A DNA stretch of 64,000 nt from Octopus sinensis. Its lineage: Eukaryota. Positions 2,536 through 60,001 of this stretch are shown here, piece by piece. The stretch spans positions 41,354,001-41,418,000 of the forward strand of contig NC_043010.1 of the NCBI RefSeq assembly GCF_006345805.1, in the 5' to 3' direction. The first letter of the stretch is position 1. Each line of letters starts with the position of its first letter. The translations under genes were made by a program, and so were the position numbers. The notes under the pieces are model-generated. The model searched no databases and was not told where the DNA came from. It saw only the letters and a program-made list of their open reading frames with translations.

Positions 2536-3426
2536 TTGCAAAAGAACACCATGTGTCAGAAGGAATAATCCAAAATGTTGTCCACAAAGACATCAGATGC
2601 AAATCGTATGCAATGAGAAAAGGTCAGAAACAGTGAAGGAAAATCGCTTAATCAGATCTAAAAAAGACTCCTGAACAAACTTAAAAACCCACCAGAGAAA
2701 GATGTCATTTGTTTCTTCTCAGACGAGAAAAACTTTGGTCAAGATGAGAAAGTAAACAGAAGAAATGACAGATGGTTATGTACAGATCCTTCGGAAGTTC
2801 CAAGAGTAATGCATACAAAATTTCCTGCAACTGTCATGGTTTTGGGGGTTGTTAGCAATGAAGGACATGTGATGCCTCCTCATTTCTTTCCACAAGGTCT
2901 TCGAGTAAACTCTGCTGCCTACATAGATGTTCTGAATACAATGGTTAAGCCACGAATCGATAATGTACGAAACAGAAGATTTTATGTGTTTCAACAAGAC
3001 TAGGCACCATCACACAAGGCTACAGCAATGCAGGAATGGATGGCGGAAAATTTTCCTGATCACACAACTCCCAAAAATTGGGCCTCCTAGCTCCCCAGAT
3101 CTCAATCCATTGGACTACTATGTATGGAACGTAGTTGAGAAAGAGGTTAATGAGCACTCTCATAACACCAAAGAATCTCTAAAAACCTCCATAGTCAGAG
3201 TAATGTCCAATATGAACACAGACCACCTGATCCTAGCATGTAGGCGATTCAGACCTCGCACAGAAGCCATTATTGAGGCTGAAGGAGATTTTATTGAATA
3301 AAATGACGAAACAATATGTTTATTCTTAGCCTCAAAACCTTTTTCAGTAAAAAAGCATTATTGTCTATTTTTAAGCCATTTTTGTGTAAGTATATAACTG
3401 TCCTCAAATACGTTATACACCCTGTA
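2533..3426 (+). mobile_element. Tc1/mariner maT-type (DD37D) transposon, 5'-truncated, inactive
   Basis: FSDEKNF...VFQQD*APSH...WPPSSPDLNPLDYYVW. There are 37 residues between the second and third Asp after correcting one frameshift, plus an in-frame stop. The right end reads ...CGTTATACACCCTG|TA at 3424-3426. Confidence 0.88.
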
Positions 3427-3698: not shown

Positions 3699-5388
3699 TC
3701 AGCCTATAACTGGGTCAAGGTGCCACACTAAATGTGCCGTAAACTCAAGGCGATTTCCCATTTTTTTCATACATTTTTTGCATGTGAATGGATCAGCATC
3801 ATCAGCTGAATGTAAACTGTTATGTAACATGAACATGGCAGAATCTTCAAACCAAATATGGCAATGTTCACATCGGGTGCCCGATGACATGTCTGATAAT
3901 TGTTGCTGCTTGGTAGTGATGTTGATGTCGCTCTTGTTGGAAGTGTTGCTGTGGTACATGAGATCAAGGTAAGCAGTGGAGATAGGATAAGGTGAGAACT
4001 GCAGTCGTGGATCTAAATGTGATGTCATGTAGAATGGCCGGGTAAATGAAGATGGAACACCGAGGAGGTTACGTGTGTAAGTCATGTTGTGAAGTCCTAG
4101 CCCTTTTGACTCCCGTTTGATCAATGCCTTCAGGCTGTCTGAACTTCTTTTAAAAGGAGGTGGGCATGGTATGTTACTTCCGGTCACTGCTGGTTGGTAA
4201 TTGTCGTCACAGGAGACGCTTGGTAGTAAGGACATGTTAAAGTAGTCTGATACATGTAACCTATTCTTGCGACTGCCCTTGGATAAGCTGGTCATCATCG
4301 CTGGGTCAGGCTGGTGGGACAGGGATGATACTTCCATCTTTGGACGATTGTTACAATCTAGTTTCTTATTTTCAATTTTGCCAGTATCTCCACGCTCTTT
4401 ACTTAAATCTTCAGCAATTATTTCTACTTCAAAGGATCTACTATCATCATTTACATTAATCTGTTGCTCTTGGTCATGGCCAGGTGACAGTTTCATCTCC
4501 ACTCTCCGACTTGGTTTGTCATTGCTGTCGTGGTCGTCCCTGTCGTTATCGTTCAAACTTTTACTACCAAAAATTGACTTCAAAGCTTCTATTTCTGTAC
4601 TATCATTGTTTTTACTGTTGTTGTTGTCATTGCTAGTAAGGTTGTCATCGTTATCGTCCTTGCTGCTGTTATTGTTATTACTACTCTCTGGTGGTATCTG
4701 AGACAGGCAGAACCTTGCACAACCTATCCACTTGCTTCCATGCAAGTTTGGCTTCTCATTTAAAGTTACTTGTTCTGAATGCAAGCTGCTTCCACTCTTT
4801 GGATTTACTATGTCAAGTCTCGGGTCAGCGCTCATGGGATGGAGAGTGCCTCTGCGTCCTCGTGTCGCCCGGATATTACCTTTAACGTCATGAAGTCTTT
4901 TGTGTCGATCCAATTCATCTGAAGTGGGAAAACCTTCTCCACAACATCTGCAAAGATGAATCTGATGGATCTCATGTGTGCGCAAGTGAGTGGCCAACAA
5001 ATGGCAACTAGTAAATCGGGCGTTGCATAAACGGCACATATTTTTCTGTCGGTTGGGAGAGTGAACCTTCATGTGTTGTTTGAGGTGGTCAGAACGTGTG
5101 AACCGTCGTCCACACAGGTTGCAAATGTATGGTCTCTCACCGCTGTGCACTCTAACATGTCGTTGTAATTTGGAAGGTGTACGATATGATTTGTTGCAGA
5201 TTGCACAGTTCAAAGGTGCATTGCCTCGACTGTGTTGTAGAACATGGAGCTGCATGTCTCTCACTGAGGTGAACTGTTTAGCACAATAACGACACATGTA
5301 ACTGGTAGCCATAGCCATCTGCTGTACAGGGTAACGACTGCTTGCACTTATTGACGGTACTCGTACACTCATCTCTTGACTCAGGTGC
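3699..5388 (-). CDS. C2H2 zinc-finger transcription factor, main coding exon: 5 N-terminal fingers plus a C-terminal Ikaros/Hunchback-like dimerisation finger pair
   Basis: Long stop-free ORF. Fingers YMCRYC..H..H, LNCAIC..HVRVH, SGERP linker, YICNLC..RSDHLKQHMKVH, MCRLC..HLRTH and HLCRCC..HKRLH (about 4890-5300). C-terminal CEHCHIWFEDSAMFMLHNSLH-SADDADPFTCKKC..RLEFTAHLVWH (3720-3878). The track start at 5525 runs through a (TATT)n intronic tract. An acceptor TTTCTGTATTTTGTAG|G puts the exon start at 5388, and the first in-exon ATG is at 5372. Confidence 0.92.
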
Positions 5389-5404
5389 CTACAAAATACA
5401 GAAA

Positions 5405-5435
<31 letters not shown>

Positions 5436-5732
5436 ATATATATATGTATAAATATTTACATATACGCAAACACATGTATAAACATTACGCATATGTCTAG
5501 GGGAAATAACTGAAATTTCAATCAATTAAAAATTAATTGAGTGGATATGAAGAGCTGTGAGTTTGATCAAATGTGGATATTTTGTGGGATGTTAGTCTGG
5601 TGAAATATGCATATCAGATGATGAGTTAGTCTGTTCTACTGTGGGTATTAGATAGTGGGATAGCCTGATATAACGTAGGCATCAGATGGGTATCAGTCTT
5701 ATCTAGTTAATATAAGTATCAGGCTGATATCT

Positions 5733-5990: not shown

Positions 5991-7372
5991 TGCTCAGAAG
6001 GAGGCTGTGGCCTGATACAGGAAAATAACTACTATAAAATAACAACAGTTGGGCTAGGAAAGTACTTAGAAACAAAGAGTGGAAGACTGCTGCATGTAGT
6101 AAAGCAACCCGAGAAAAAAGGGAGCCCTTTTCTCTATATTCAAAGAGGCGACAAAATACGAAACAGAAACAAACTACACTGACACACTGATCTTAGATAA
6201 CAACATAACAGAAATGGTTAAAGAGACAAAAAACAACCTGAAAACAGAATTACAAAAGGTACTGAAGAAGAAATGGAAGAAAAAAAATCACTTCATGGCC
6301 AGTACTCTGGAAGGCTTGACAGAGAAGAAGTAAGCCTAACAATGGCTCAAAACCTCTGGACTAAAAGCTGAAACGGAAGGACTATTTCTCGCTGCACAAG
6401 ACCAATACCTGAATACAAACAATTATAAAAACAAGATAATGAAAATACCAATACCAAATGCCCTATACCAAATGCAGAAAGTGCAAGCAGCACAATGAGA
6501 CAGTTGGCCACATCGTCTCGGGATGCCCAGTTCTTGCCAAGTCTGAATATATATACAGACACGACAAAATAAGCAGTTATATCCGCTGGACAATATGTCA
6601 ATATTACAATATTAAGGATGACAATAGGTGGTATAAGCATATGCGAAATAAGGTACAAGACAACGACCAGGCCACAATCATCTGGGATAGGCCGCTTCAA
6701 ACCGACAAAGAAATAAAAGTTAATCGTCCAGACATAATAGTCAAGGATTGGGAAAAAAAAACACCTGCTTACTGATAGACATTGCAGTCCCTTCTGATCA
6801 AAATATTGTCCAAAAAGAAGTGGAGAAATTGTCAAAGTGCAAAGGCCTCAAAATTGAAGTATTTAAGATGTGGGACATGAAGGCAAAAACAATACCAATA
6901 ATAATTGGGGCATTGGGCATGATAAAAACATATGAACAAAAACGTAGAAGCTATACGTGAATCCTCAACACTACACACTATCTCCAAAATAGTCCTGCTA
7001 GGAACAGTCCACATCCTACGCAAGACTCTCAATTCAATAATACAACCTAAACAAAACAACCAACAAGCACAAGACGCACTCTATATAGCATCTACCCAGT
7101 GAAATAAACTCCCACCAGCAAACCAAATAACCAATGCATTACACACTCAACACAACACAAGCTGTAACACAACAAAATACTGCACCACACCTCAAGAGAA
7201 AAACAAAAACTAACACAATACAATACCGGGAAGAATTTGCACACTCACAACAGCAGAAAAGAACACACAATGCTGCACACACCTTTGCAACACGAAGGGG
7301 TGGCAGGTGATGTAGTAGAAATTTGCCTCAGACTACCAAATGTTAAACAACTATATAAAAATAATAATAATA
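5990..7372 (+). mobile_element. R4/Dong-like non-LTR retrotransposon 3' fragment (CCHC + restriction-like endonuclease) ending in (TAA)n
   Basis: WLKTSGLKAETEGLFLAAQDQ, CRKC..HNETVGHIVSGC, RPDIIVKD..CLLIDIAVP, IPIIIGALG. The 3' UTR is followed by TAA repeats at about 7360-7372. Frameshifted. Confidence 0.88.
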
Positions 7373-26149: not shown

Positions 26150-27452
26150 GTGCTGAGAACTTCATGACTACCATTTTATATCGACACTTATGCCCCTTTC
26201 ATATCACTCTTCAGGATAGAGAGTACTCGCGGCGAAGTGAGAAAAATATTGGCTTCAAAGCTGAATGCCAGAAACATAATTTCGGCAATAAACTCGCGCA
26301 CCGTCGCAGTAGTTCATTTATGGCGCTGGAATCCTGAAGTGGACAGAGGAGGAGCTAAAGGAGATAGACAGGAAGTCAATAAAGATCCTAACGATGTATA
26401 GAGCCCTTCATCCACGTGAAGACACTGATTGCCTATAGATGAAGAGAGCAAATGGAGGAAGGGGACTTATAAGTGTGGAAGACCGCGTGCATATTGAACT
26501 CGAGTGCTTAATGAGTTACCTAGCTCAAAGTAAGGAAACCTTGCTAGTGACAAAAAAAAGGGAAAAACAAAGGAAGAAGTACAAAAACGACATGAAGAAG
26601 AATTACGCAAGATGGGACTACATAATCAATTCCATGTAGCCACAAAAGAAGTTGCTGGAAAAATAGGTGGGATTGGCTGATGAAAGGAACCCTAAAAAAA
26701 GAGACTGAAAGCACTATATTGGCAGCGCAGGACCAAGCTCTGGCCACGAACTGGAGGGCCAATCTGAGGAATGAGCAAGTGTTTTCGCTGTGCCCCATCT
26801 GCAATACAGGGGATGAAACCATTGCCCACATCACGAACGAATGCCCTAGTCTTGTCCAAAACCACCACAGATTGTGGCGACACGACCAGGTAGCGAAAGT
26901 GCTACATTGGAAACTGTACGAAAAGAGGGGGTCAGAGTGGCAAGACGTGGTATGAACACAAACCACAGACTAGCAAAATTCTCTGGGATTTCTCAATCCA
27001 AAATGATCAAGTGTTAGAGCATAACAGGCTGGTCCTAGTGGTTGATAGACAAAGTGTACGGCATGTGCTATATAGTTGATGTTGCAATCCCATTTGACCC
27101 ACGAATAGTCAAGAAGGAAAGCGAAACGATAGATAAATACAACCCTCTTAAGTACGGAATAGCCCGACTATGGAAAATGAAGAAGATGAAGATGGTGCCA
27201 ATTGTTAGGTCTTTGGGAATAGTATCAGAAGGCATCAAAGAGAATGTAAAGGAAATTGGAATAGAATGCCCAGTAGAGCTGTTACAAAAGGTTTGCTTCC
27301 TTGGCACGGCCAGAATAATTAGGAAAGTATTAGATAGCTGAAAAAAACAATAGATACCGTAGGCTGTAGCTAGTAAGACCGCAACGCATGCAAGACTTCA
27401 GGTGTCACAACAAAACCTGTAATAAAGAGAAAATAATGATAATAATAATAAT
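26150..27452 (+). mobile_element. R4/Dong-like LINE 3' fragment ending in (TAA)n
   Basis: KLNARNIISAINSR, KGTLKKETESTILAAQDQAL, CPIC..GDETIAHITNEC, CYIVDVAIPFD, GTARIIRKVLDS*. Confidence 0.88.
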
Positions 27453-58739: not shown

Positions 58740-60001
58740 TTGGGTTGTCAGGAAAATTCGTGTCGATTTATAGTAGCTTACCTTTTGATTTATTTTAGAA
58801 CAGGGTTGAGTTCATAAAATAGGATTTGACTACACCTCCATTTAGAGCACAGTTTAAGCTATCTTTTCGTAGAAGAAGGTTTATGTTCCTATAACCTGTG
58901 TTAATTCTGTAACCCTTTAAAATGGAAGATTAGAAAGTTCATTTTCGGCACTTGATGCTTTTCTTTTTCCGTAAAGGGGAAAATGCCTCACAGGCAACCA
59001 AAGAAATATGCGCAGTTTATGGTGATGTTTCTTTATCCGAAAGAACTGTACGGAAGTGGTTCGCAAGGTTCTGAGCGGGAGATTGTAGCCTTATTGATAA
59101 AGAGCGATCAGGCAGACCGTCAACTACAGATGATGACCAACTCAAGTCATTAACTGAGAATAGCCAACATTGTACAACCCGAGAATTGGCAGAAAGTCTC
59201 AACCTATCAAAATCCGTCGTTCATGAGCACCTGGTAAAGATTGGGTACACTAATCGCTACGATGCTTGGGTACCACATGAGTTGAGTGAGAAGAACCTTT
59301 TGAATCGCATTTCCATCTATAAACGGAATGAAAACGCGCCTTTTTTAAAGCAAATAGTGACAGGTGATGAGAAACGGATTATCAACCAAAATGTTCAGAG
59401 AAAGTGATCCTGGAGTAAGCGACATGAGCCACCCCCAACGCGGGTCTTCACCCTAAAAAAGTCTTGCTTTGTGTCTGGTGTGATTGGAAAGGAATTATGT
59501 ACTGTGATCTTCTCCTAAGTAACCAGACAATTAATTCTGAGAAATACTGCATACAACTGGACGAGTTAAAAGCATCAATTCAAGAGAAACGTCCAGAATT
59601 GGCCAACAGTAAGGGTGTTGTTTTCCAACATGATGATGCAAGACCGCACGTTTCTTTGGGAACCGGACAAAAATTGCTGCAGCTCATCTGGGATGTGTTA
59701 CGCCACCCTCCATATTCACCAGATATTCCTCCTTCGGATTTCCACGTATTCAGGTCTCTGCAGAACAGTCTTAATGGTAAAAATTTCAATTCCTTGGATG
59801 GCATAAAAAGATACCTTGAGGAATTCTTTGCTATGAAACCACCTCAGTTCTGGGAAGAGGGTATTTTCAAGTTAAAGGAAAGATGGAGACGCATTGTGCA
59901 GCAAAATGGTTCATATTTGGCTGATTAAAAATGTAATGGCAAGTATTTATTGACCCTTTTCTTTCCTTTAAAAATCGGCACGAACTTTCCGGACAACCCA
60001 A
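58740..60001 (+). mobile_element. Full-length (1262 bp) mariner DD34D element, inactive
   Basis: TA|TTGGGTTGTCAGGAAAATTCGTGTCGATTT ... AAATCGGCACGAACTTTCCGGACAACCCAA|TA. The transposase (about 58922-59928) has WVPHEL, TGDEK and HDDARPH-(34)-D, with stops and frameshifts. Confidence 0.93.

What the first reader, a model, noticed from the sequence alone, without database searches (positions are those of the whole stretch)
3699..5388. Zinc-finger protein combining an Ikaros/Hunchback-type C-terminal dimerisation finger pair with unrelated N-terminal DNA-binding fingers
Seen: the C-terminal CEHCHIWFEDSAMFMLHNSLH..DPFTCKKC..RLEFTAHL aligns residue for residue with the Ikaros-family pattern CEHC...F.D..M...H...H...DPF.C..C....R.EF..H. 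Known: this paired finger mediates dimerisation in Ikaros/Pegasus, Hunchback and TRPS1. The five N-terminal fingers (helices TPSKLQRH, RSDHLKQH) do not resemble Hunchback or Ikaros fingers as I recall them. Inference: this is a distinct dimerising factor that fused the module to a new DNA-binding array, and it is unlike the long tandem C2H2 arrays expanded in octopus.
Basis: partly seen in the sequence, partly recalled or inferred. Interest (0 to 1): 0.7.

Follow-up and report, generated by a model that had tools for sequence, protein, structure and literature searches.

The report
Mollusc zinc-finger factor with Ikaros-type tail
This octopus gene encodes an uncharacterised transcription factor with five DNA-binding zinc fingers and an Ikaros/Hunchback-type finger pair at its tail; it belongs to a family found so far only in molluscs, with at least five copies in octopods, so it is a new member of a known kind and not a one-off fusion.

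Summary
On the minus strand, one large exon (3699..5388) encodes five N-terminal C2H2 fingers, a long low-complexity linker and a C-terminal finger pair. It is 100% identical to an Octopus sinensis protein auto-named 'EVI1-A isoform X1'.

The C-terminal pair is Ikaros/Hunchback-type in HMM tests run both ways. An Ikaros/Pegasus/Hunchback profile scores it 39.8 bits. The protein's own N-terminal pairs score at most 12.6. Generic pairs have a median of 9.4 and a maximum of 29.8.

The N-terminal fingers are no closer to Ikaros or Hunchback fingers than ordinary fingers are.

The gene is not a singular fusion. The same 5+2 architecture occurs in cephalopods, bivalves, gastropods and a chiton. The tail pair is its most conserved part. 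Octopods carry at least five paralogues, two of them auto-named 'Eos-like' and 'ztf-16-like'. Other molluscan proteins and a hemichordate protein join the same tail pair to different finger arrays, as the C. elegans hunchback/Ikaros-like (HIL) genes are reported to do.

Best reading: a sequence-specific factor of the HIL superfamily whose tail mediates self- or paralogue association. Dimerisation and the fusion origin remain untested. Interest is moderate.

The parts
3699..5388 (-). Main coding exon. It holds residues 12-573 of the annotated 573-aa protein, all seven zinc fingers and the TGA stop at 3701-3699.
   Evidence: The ORF and sequence show the acceptor AG at 5390-5389. The translation is 100% identical to O. 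sinensis P0001. tblastn places P0001 residues 5-573 at 5408..3702.
27358..27389 (-). First coding exon of isoform X1 (MRCGLTSYSL plus CG of the split Arg codon), followed by a GT donor. The intron is about 22 kb.
   Evidence: An exact peptide match was found in the six-frame translation, and the flanking sequence was read directly.
5232..5294 (-). Finger 1 (CRYCAKQFTSVRDMQLHVLQH), followed by a non-canonical linker.
   Evidence: Regex and Pfam zf-C2H2 hits. Coordinates were computed from the exon phase and checked.
5145..5207 (-). Finger 2 (CAICNKSYRTPSKLQRHVRVH). The helix TPSKLQRH is nearly invariant across the family. The only canonical linker of the array (SGERPY) joins it to finger 3.
   Evidence: Family alignment and conservation line.
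5061..5123 (-). Finger 3 (CNLCGRRFTRSDHLKQHMKVH). The helix RSDH[LV]KQH is nearly invariant. Fingers 2 and 3 are the probable core DNA-reading pair.
   Evidence: Best Pfam zf-C2H2 stretch. Conservation data.
4974..5036 (-). Finger 4 (CRLCNARFTSCHLLATHLRTH). It is the only finger with above-background likeness to an Ikaros finger (Ikaros finger 3, 94th percentile).
4890..4952 (-). Finger 5 (CRCCGEGFPTSDELDRHKRLH).
4707..4733 (-). Conserved short motif KWIGCARFC about 50 residues after finger 5. The bivalve and gastropod form is GLAKF. Its function is unknown.
   Evidence: Regex across family members. Coordinates checked.
4110..4121 (-). IKRE, a match to the SUMO-acceptor consensus (hydrophobic-K-x-E) inside the conserved ALIKRE[SP] stretch of the linker.
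   Evidence: A motif of this form is present in the linker of 53 of 62 family members. The motif is short, so it is only a hint.
3720..3872 (-). C-terminal finger pair (fingers 6 and 7) of Ikaros/Hunchback type, joined by the 9-residue linker SADDADPFT. It is the most conserved part of the protein.
   Evidence: HMM tests in both directions. It is 100% identical to Argonauta, 82% to Mytilus and 60% to a chiton, against 91%, 55% and 52% for the five-finger array. The predicted fold is two beta-beta-alpha units with mean pLDDT 77.7.

Best explanation
The gene encodes a nuclear, sequence-specific transcription factor of the hunchback/Ikaros-like (HIL) superfamily. It belongs to an uncharacterised subfamily, so far seen only in molluscs, with a fixed 5+2 finger architecture.

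Proposed mechanism, all inferred:
- The N-terminal array binds DNA. Fingers 2 and 3 form the specificity core, because their helices are nearly invariant and they are joined by the only canonical linker in the array.
- The long low-complexity linker carries short conserved motifs that probably recruit cofactors or receive modification.
- The C-terminal pair does not read DNA. It serves as a protein-protein interface for self-association and probably for association with the four or more octopod paralogues, whose tail pairs are 69-74% identical to this one (three paralogue clades measured). This would parallel homo- and heterodimerisation among Ikaros-family proteins.

Shown here: the gene model, the architecture, the family and its taxonomic spread, the specific Ikaros-type signature of the tail pair, and the lack of a specific likeness of the N-terminal array to Ikaros or Hunchback.

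Inferred: DNA binding, dimerisation and paralogue heterodimers.
For: Gene model and identity.

Architecture: the 5+2 arrangement recurs in about 60 proteins. Every named one is molluscan: Octopus, Argonauta, Mytilus, scallops, Saccostrea, heterodont bivalves, Haliotis, Patella, Gigantopelta, Babylonia, Nucella and the chiton Liolophura.

Tail pair is Ikaros-type:
- The reverse profile gives 39.8 bits, against at most 12.6 for the protein's own N-terminal pairs and a generic median of 9.4 and maximum of 29.8.
- Read directly from the sequence, helix positions -1/3/6 are D/M/L in finger 6 and N/E/A in finger 7. The Ikaros-family pair inside P0241 has D/M/L and D/E/S. Hydrophobic residues at base-contact positions fit a protein interface better than DNA reading.

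Conservation: the tail pair is more conserved than the DNA-binding array.

Paralogues: the NJ tree groups three cephalopod clades with 96% bootstrap support. Other molluscs show one copy per species in this sample.

Family definition and the dimerisation role of the tail pair come from 10.1101/2022.06.20.496913 and 10.1101/2024.11.11.623063, which cite Large & Mathies 2010 and McCarty et al. 2003.
Against: No interaction or DNA-binding data exist for any member.

The last finger has H-x3-H spacing and the two tail fingers are joined by a 9-residue linker. My recollection for Ikaros and Hunchback is H-x5-H and a 7-residue linker, so the interface geometry could differ.

HBL-1 shows that a tail pair of this type need not homodimerise (10.1101/2024.11.11.623063).

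The monomer model is only moderately confident, and fold search found only generic two-finger DNA-binding units with E of at least 0.04. No solved structure of such a tail pair turned up for comparison.

The margin between Ikaros-type and the best generic pairs is about 10 bits. The generic background came from lists ranked by whole-protein score, so it is not an unbiased sample.
Confidence: 0.65

Rival explanations
1. Divergent orthologue, not a fusion. The whole protein descends from the ancestral hunchback/Ikaros-like gene, and the N-terminal array has diverged beyond recognition. No domain shuffling took place. Function is as in the best explanation, but the origin differs.
For: The layout is the same as in Ikaros: an N-terminal cluster with a two-finger core, a long linker and a terminal pair. 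Finger 4 resembles Ikaros finger 3 (C-LCN...L--HLRTH) at the 94th percentile of background. HIL members in C. elegans are described as having varied finger clusters (10.1101/2022.06.20.496913).
Against: The other four fingers score at or below the generic median against Ikaros, Pegasus and Hunchback fingers. The same tail type sits on 3-, 4-6- and 12-finger arrays that are unrelated to this one, which fits module mobility at least as well.
Confidence: 0.25
2. The C-terminal pair is not a dimerisation module. It is an extra nucleic-acid-binding unit or a docking site for a different, non-self partner.
For: Both fingers are canonical C-x2-C-x12-H-x3-H units, and their nearest structural matches are DNA-bound two-finger units. 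HBL-1's tail pair is reported to bind LIN-46 and not itself (10.1101/2024.11.11.623063).
Against: Base-contact positions are D/M/L and N/E/A, which are poor DNA readers, and they match the Ikaros-family pair. There is no TGEKP-type linker. Conservation is extreme and exceeds that of the DNA-binding array.
Confidence: 0.15
3. The gene is an ordinary member of the lineage-specific C2H2 expansion of octopus, or a decaying or mis-annotated copy, and the Ikaros-like pattern is chance.
For: Pfam sees only generic C2H2 models. NCBI's automatic name is an unrelated one (EVI1-A). Transposon remnants flank the exon.
Against: The frame is intact with proper splice signals. Orthologues exist across four molluscan classes with a fixed 5+2 layout. 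The profile tests lift the tail pair above generic pairs in both directions.
Confidence: 0.03

Closest known systems
Ikaros family (IKZF1-5, including Pegasus/IKZF5), vertebrates
   Same: An N-terminal cluster of DNA-binding C2H2 fingers with a two-finger core, a long linker, and a terminal finger pair. The pair shares the pattern C-x-H-C-x3-F-x-D-x2-M-x3-H-x3-H ... DPF-x-C-x2-C-x5-[DN]R-x-EF-x2-H. Residues at helix positions -1/3/6 are the same. The family consists of several paralogues with near-identical tails.
   Different: Five fingers instead of four (three in Pegasus). The finger sequences are not specifically related. The last finger is H-x3-H, not H-x5-H. The inter-finger linker in the tail is 9 residues, not 7. 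No orthology is visible: no IKZF protein is among the best 120 hits.
Hunchback (Drosophila Hb, C. elegans HBL-1, lophotrochozoan Hb)
   Same: A C-terminal finger pair of the same type. It is a protostome member of the same superfamily.
   Different: The middle fingers MF1-4 of Hunchback score in the lowest third of generic fingers against fingers 2-4 here. There are no N-terminal NF fingers or Hunchback boxes. The second tail finger resembles Ikaros ([DN]RxEF) more than Hunchback (GPVGLF).
C. elegans hunchback/Ikaros-like (HIL) genes ztf-16 and ehn-3 (Large & Mathies 2010)
   Same: The same concept: lineage-specific proteins that keep the terminal pair while the DNA-binding cluster varies in number and sequence. 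NCBI's pipeline named one octopus paralogue 'ztf-16-like'.
   Different: Orthology to ZTF-16 could not be tested because no ZTF-16 sequence was at hand. The 5+2 layout, the KW.GCARFC/GLAKF motif and the near-invariant TPSKLQRH and RSDH[LV]KQH helices define a separate subfamily, so far seen only in molluscs.
TRPS1
   Same: It is said to carry an Ikaros-type terminal finger pair (my own knowledge, McCarty et al. 2003).
   Different: TRPS1 has a GATA finger and many dispersed fingers. It was not compared here because no sequence was available.

Membership tests
Hunchback/Ikaros-like (HIL) superfamily | An N-terminal or central cluster of C2H2 fingers that acts as the DNA-binding domain | tested here: met
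   Five tandem C2H2 fingers at P0001 residues 43-177. DNA binding itself is inferred.
Hunchback/Ikaros-like (HIL) superfamily | A pair of C2H2 fingers at the extreme C-terminus, separated from the cluster by a long linker | tested here: met
   Fingers at residues 517-567 of 573, about 340 residues after finger 5.
Hunchback/Ikaros-like (HIL) superfamily | The terminal pair carries the specific sequence signature of the Ikaros/Hunchback pair and not that of generic C2H2 fingers | tested here: met
   The reverse profile gives 39.8 bits, against a generic median of 9.4 and maximum of 29.8. The forward profile gives 40.2 bits for an Ikaros-family pair, against at most 27.9 for generic pairs. The margin is about 10 bits and the background sample is not unbiased.
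Hunchback/Ikaros-like (HIL) superfamily | The terminal pair mediates homo- or heterodimerisation | not testable with these tools
   Only single-chain prediction was available, and no solved structure of such a pair turned up for comparison.
Ikaros family proper (IKZF orthologue) | DNA-binding fingers homologous to Ikaros F1-F4 | tested here: not met
No IKZF protein appears in the best 120 hits.
Hunchback orthologue | Middle fingers MF1-4 of Hunchback type | tested here: not met
   Fly Hunchback MF1-4 score at or below the 29th percentile of generic fingers against fingers 1-4 (at or below the 12th against fingers 2-3).
Hunchback orthologue | Hunchback-type second tail finger (GPVGLF, H-x5-H) | tested here: not met
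   Finger 7 reads GNRLEFTAHLVWH, with H-x3-H spacing. This is read directly from the sequence.
Expanded tandem C2H2 arrays of octopus | A long uninterrupted array of fingers with TGEKP-type linkers, restricted to one lineage | tested here: not met
   Seven fingers with only one canonical linker. Orthologues occur in four molluscan classes.

The most novel reading that the evidence does not exclude
Molluscs evolved their own HIL subfamily, which cephalopods expanded to at least five paralogues that kept near-identical tail pairs while their DNA-binding arrays diverged. Together these form a combinatorial homo- and heterodimer network, analogous to the vertebrate Ikaros family but independent of it. 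Because Hunchback, Ikaros and ZTF-16 act as temporal-identity factors elsewhere, this network could contribute to temporal or cell-type patterning in the large cephalopod nervous system.
Probability: 0.25. Interest if true: 0.6.

Novelty: new member of a known kind. Interest (0 to 1): 0.35.

Why it matters
If the tail pair dimerises as in Ikaros, cephalopods hold a small, independently expanded set of factors that could mix as homo- and heterodimers. That is a compact route to combinatorial gene control in a lineage known for its neural complexity.

The family also gives a clean natural experiment on how one protein-interaction finger pair is reused with different DNA-binding arrays. The arrays seen here have 3, 4-6, 5 and 12 fingers, in molluscs and a hemichordate.

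In practical terms, the automatic names of these genes (EVI1-A, PRDM10-like, myosin-G heavy chain-like, suppressor of hairy wing-like, ZNF148) are misleading. The genes could be re-annotated as one family.

Tried and rejected
- Searching the big protein database with the 63-residue tail alignment returned nothing, not even the family itself. The word index evidently fails on short queries, and one capped search was lost.
- PDB sequence search with the tail pair found only generic DNA-binding fingers and the N-terminal fingers of Ikaros and Helios. No solved tail pair turned up.
- The monomer structure of the tail pair and the fold search against PDB were uninformative beyond showing two beta-beta-alpha fingers.
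- I tried to name the taxon of the unnamed 750-970 aa clade (P0050 and relatives) through encoding contigs and a third protein search. I obtained only an ENA assembly id and a nearest likeness to heterodont bivalves.
- Literature searches for a described molluscan Ikaros-like gene found nothing relevant.
- I considered an Ikaros-type origin of the array from my hand alignment of fingers 2-5 to Ikaros F1-F4. The background test left only finger 4 against F3 mildly elevated.
- I checked for a second family copy in the window and for degenerate 3' copies of the last finger like those in relatives. There are none.

Full report
**1. What is at the coordinates**

The feature lies on the minus strand. 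A 608-codon open frame runs from 5525 to 3699, but its first 45 codons are intronic. They consist of a (TTTA)n run and a polypyrimidine tract that end in the AG acceptor at 5390-5389, so the exon begins at 5388 in codon phase 2. The stop is TGA at 3701-3699.

The translation is 100% identical to a 573-aa Octopus sinensis protein that NCBI names 'MDS1 and EVI1 complex locus protein EVI1-A isoform X1' (P0001). Its first eleven codons come from a small exon at 27389..27358, which is followed by GT. The intron is therefore about 22 kb, and all seven fingers sit in one exon.

**2. Anatomy**

- Pfam recognises only generic C2H2 models.
- A regex places five tandem fingers at P0001 residues 43-177 and two more at 517-567, six residues from the C-terminus.
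- Only fingers 2 and 3 are joined by a canonical linker (SGERPY). The other linkers are non-canonical.
- The roughly 340-residue linker between the array and the tail is low-complexity, rich in Asn, Asp and Ser.
- Two short conserved elements stand out in that linker. One is KWIGCARFC, about 50 residues after finger 5. The other is ALIKRES, whose IKRE fits the SUMO-acceptor consensus.

**3. The family**

The full-length search returned about 60 proteins with the same 5+2 layout and an almost invariant tail pair.

- Every member that carries a source name is molluscan. The list covers octopods (Octopus, Argonauta), a cuttlefish fragment, mussels, scallops, oysters, unionids, heterodont bivalves, vetigastropods, a limpet and caenogastropods. 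The chiton Liolophura was found by the exhaustive profile search.
- A clade of unnamed 750-970 aa proteins from ENA and Logan assemblies is closest to heterodont bivalves.
- A gastropod group that seemed to lack the tail has it in a downstream exon.
- No annelid, brachiopod, arthropod or vertebrate protein with this layout appeared. Beyond the family, the hits are generic poly-finger proteins.

**4. Paralogues**

Octopods carry at least five clades:
- this gene, with its Argonauta orthologue at 61% overall identity;
- a clade auto-named 'ztf-16-like';
- a clade auto-named 'Eos-like';
- two clades auto-named 'myosin-G heavy chain-like'.

A neighbour-joining tree on the array plus the tail groups three of these clades as a cephalopod-only cluster with 96% bootstrap support. 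Each sampled bivalve or gastropod species contributes one copy. The expansion therefore looks cephalopod-specific.

Some paralogues are linked. Three Argonauta copies lie on one 21.4-Mb contig. The window holds only one copy.

**5. Is the tail pair really Ikaros/Hunchback-type?**

I tested this in both directions.

Forward test:
- A profile of 19 molluscan tails was run exhaustively over 1.84 billion representative proteins. I then re-scored the returned proteins per domain.
- Family members score 111-136 bits and the chiton 95 bits.
- Three further molluscan families with a terminal pair but different arrays score 45-76 bits.
- An Ikaros-family tail pair held in the library scores 40.2 bits. 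It sits inside P0241, which turned out to be a synthetic NLS-tagged construct made of a Pegasus/Hunchback chimeric pair and an Ikaros-family pair.
- The best generic pair among the poly-finger proteins scores 27.9 bits.

Reverse test:
- A profile was built from the two P0241 pairs plus the three remembered tails.
- It scores this protein's tail 39.8 bits and its own N-terminal pairs at most 12.6 bits.
- Across 1,827 generic pairs the median is 9.4 and the maximum 29.8. The single exception, at 41.0 bits, is a Ptychodera flava protein that itself has 12 fingers plus a terminal pair of this type.

At residue level, helix positions -1/3/6 read D/M/L in finger 6 and N/E/A in finger 7. The Ikaros-family pair of P0241 has D/M/L and D/E/S.

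Two limits apply. The margin over the best generic pairs is only about 10 bits, and the generic set is not an unbiased sample.

Three differences from Ikaros and Hunchback remain:
- the last finger is H-x3-H, not H-x5-H;
- the linker within the pair has 9 residues, not 7;
- the second finger follows the Ikaros form ([DN]RxEF) and not the Hunchback form.

**6. Is the N-terminal array unrelated to Ikaros and Hunchback?**

I built one profile per finger from 40 family members.

- The reference fingers fall between the 0.4th and 73rd percentile of the background.
- The one exception is Ikaros finger 3 against finger 4 (shared C-LCN...L--HLRTH), at the 94th percentile.
- The arrays of the other molluscan families with this tail type are not specifically related to this one either.

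This does not prove a fusion, because fingers diverge fast and an ancestral array could have drifted.

**7. Conservation pattern and what it suggests**

| Compared with | Tail pair identity | Five-finger array identity |
|---|---|---|
| Argonauta | 100% | 91% |
| Mytilus | 82% | 55% |
| Chiton (Liolophura) | 60% | 52% |

Within the array, the helices of finger 2 (TPSKLQRH) and finger 3 (RSDH[LV]KQH) and the linker between them are nearly invariant. Fingers 1, 4 and 5 vary.

The simplest reading has three parts. Fingers 2 and 3 give a conserved DNA specificity. By the canonical recognition code I would guess a G-rich core, but that is my inference and is untested. Fingers 1, 4 and 5 modulate binding. 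The tail is a constrained protein-protein surface. Because the measured octopod paralogues keep tails 69-74% identical to this one, cross-association among them is plausible.

**8. What could not be shown**

- Dimerisation could not be tested. Only single chains can be predicted here.
- The monomer model shows two beta-beta-alpha fingers at mean pLDDT 77.7.
- Its nearest solved structures are generic DNA-bound two-finger units with E of at least 0.04.
- No solved Ikaros-type tail pair turned up in the searches.
- The literature warns that type does not equal behaviour. HBL-1 is reported not to homodimerise through its tail and to bind LIN-46 instead (10.1101/2024.11.11.623063).

**9. Comparison with what is known**

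[quoted passage not shown] C. elegans has several lineage-specific members: hbl-1, ehn-3, ztf-16 and others (10.1101/2022.06.20.496913; 10.1101/2024.11.11.623063).

This protein meets the architectural and sequence criteria of that superfamily. It fails the criteria for being an Ikaros or a Hunchback orthologue. It is best filed as a new, undescribed subfamily of a known kind.

I found no paper on a molluscan member. Orthology to nematode ZTF-16 remains untested.

**10. Verdict**

The gene is an intact member of a conserved 5+2 HIL-type family, so far seen only in molluscs, that expanded in cephalopods. It is not a unique fusion.

Interest is moderate. The idea of an independently expanded dimer network in cephalopods is attractive but rests on inference.

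Noticed in passing
window 2809-3301 (+), 6458-6775 (+), 59464-59928 (+): Transposon remnants. There is a weak DDE_3-type transposase fragment about 400 bp beyond the gene's stop codon (E 5.6e-4, below the Pfam cut-off). There is a weak reverse-transcriptase zinc-binding fragment (zf-RVT, E 4.7e-4) in the intron. There is a clear mariner Transposase_1 fragment (E 6.7e-14).
   Followed up: partly
window about 5402-5436 (minus strand): A (TTTA)n microsatellite sits directly upstream of the polypyrimidine tract and splice acceptor of the main exon. It is what extends the raw ORF to 608 codons.
   Followed up: no
L001 3921-4031; L002 4096-4632: In two relatives' loci the 3' flank holds degenerate partial copies of the coding segment for the last tail finger (for example ...NDPYTCRKCYK-MGNRLEFNAHLTWHLEP). 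The window gene has none.
   Followed up: partly
P0142, P0147, P0190, P0200 (gastropods, chiton); P0216, P0224, P0226, P0198 (the named ones are bivalves): These are further uncharacterised families, molluscan where a source name exists, that join an Ikaros-type terminal pair to different arrays of 3 or 4-6 fingers. The 3+2 family ends in a conserved VWHVKYPHTIPNY extension.
   Followed up: partly
P0160 (Ptychodera flava, 1049 aa): A hemichordate protein has 12 N-terminal fingers and an Ikaros-type pair at its very C-terminus. The module-plus-variable-array pattern is therefore not confined to molluscs and nematodes.
   Followed up: partly
P0241 (133 aa, MetaClust): This library entry is a synthetic construct: SV40-type NLS, a Pegasus/Hunchback chimeric tail pair, a GEKP linker and an Ikaros-family tail pair. 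It was useful as an independent check of the remembered reference sequences.
   Followed up: yes
P0008, P0011, P0023 (Argonauta hians); P0019, P0030 (Octopus vulgaris): Three Argonauta paralogues lie on the same 21,394,655-bp contig, and two O. vulgaris paralogues lie on the same 118,226,620-bp contig. This suggests the cephalopod expansion arose partly by local duplication.
   Followed up: no
P0019 (Octopus vulgaris, 563 aa): This paralogue's gene model ends in ...KKLDYSILNEFF and lacks the second tail finger. Its Argonauta orthologue P0011 is intact. It may be a mis-annotated last exon or a tail-less isoform like ZTF-16a.
   Followed up: no
window 4707-4733 and 4110-4121 (minus strand): Two conserved linker motifs of unknown role. 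One is KW.GCARFC in cephalopods, with GLAKF in bivalves and gastropods. The other is an IKxE[PS] match to the SUMO consensus, present in 53 of 62 members.
   Followed up: partly
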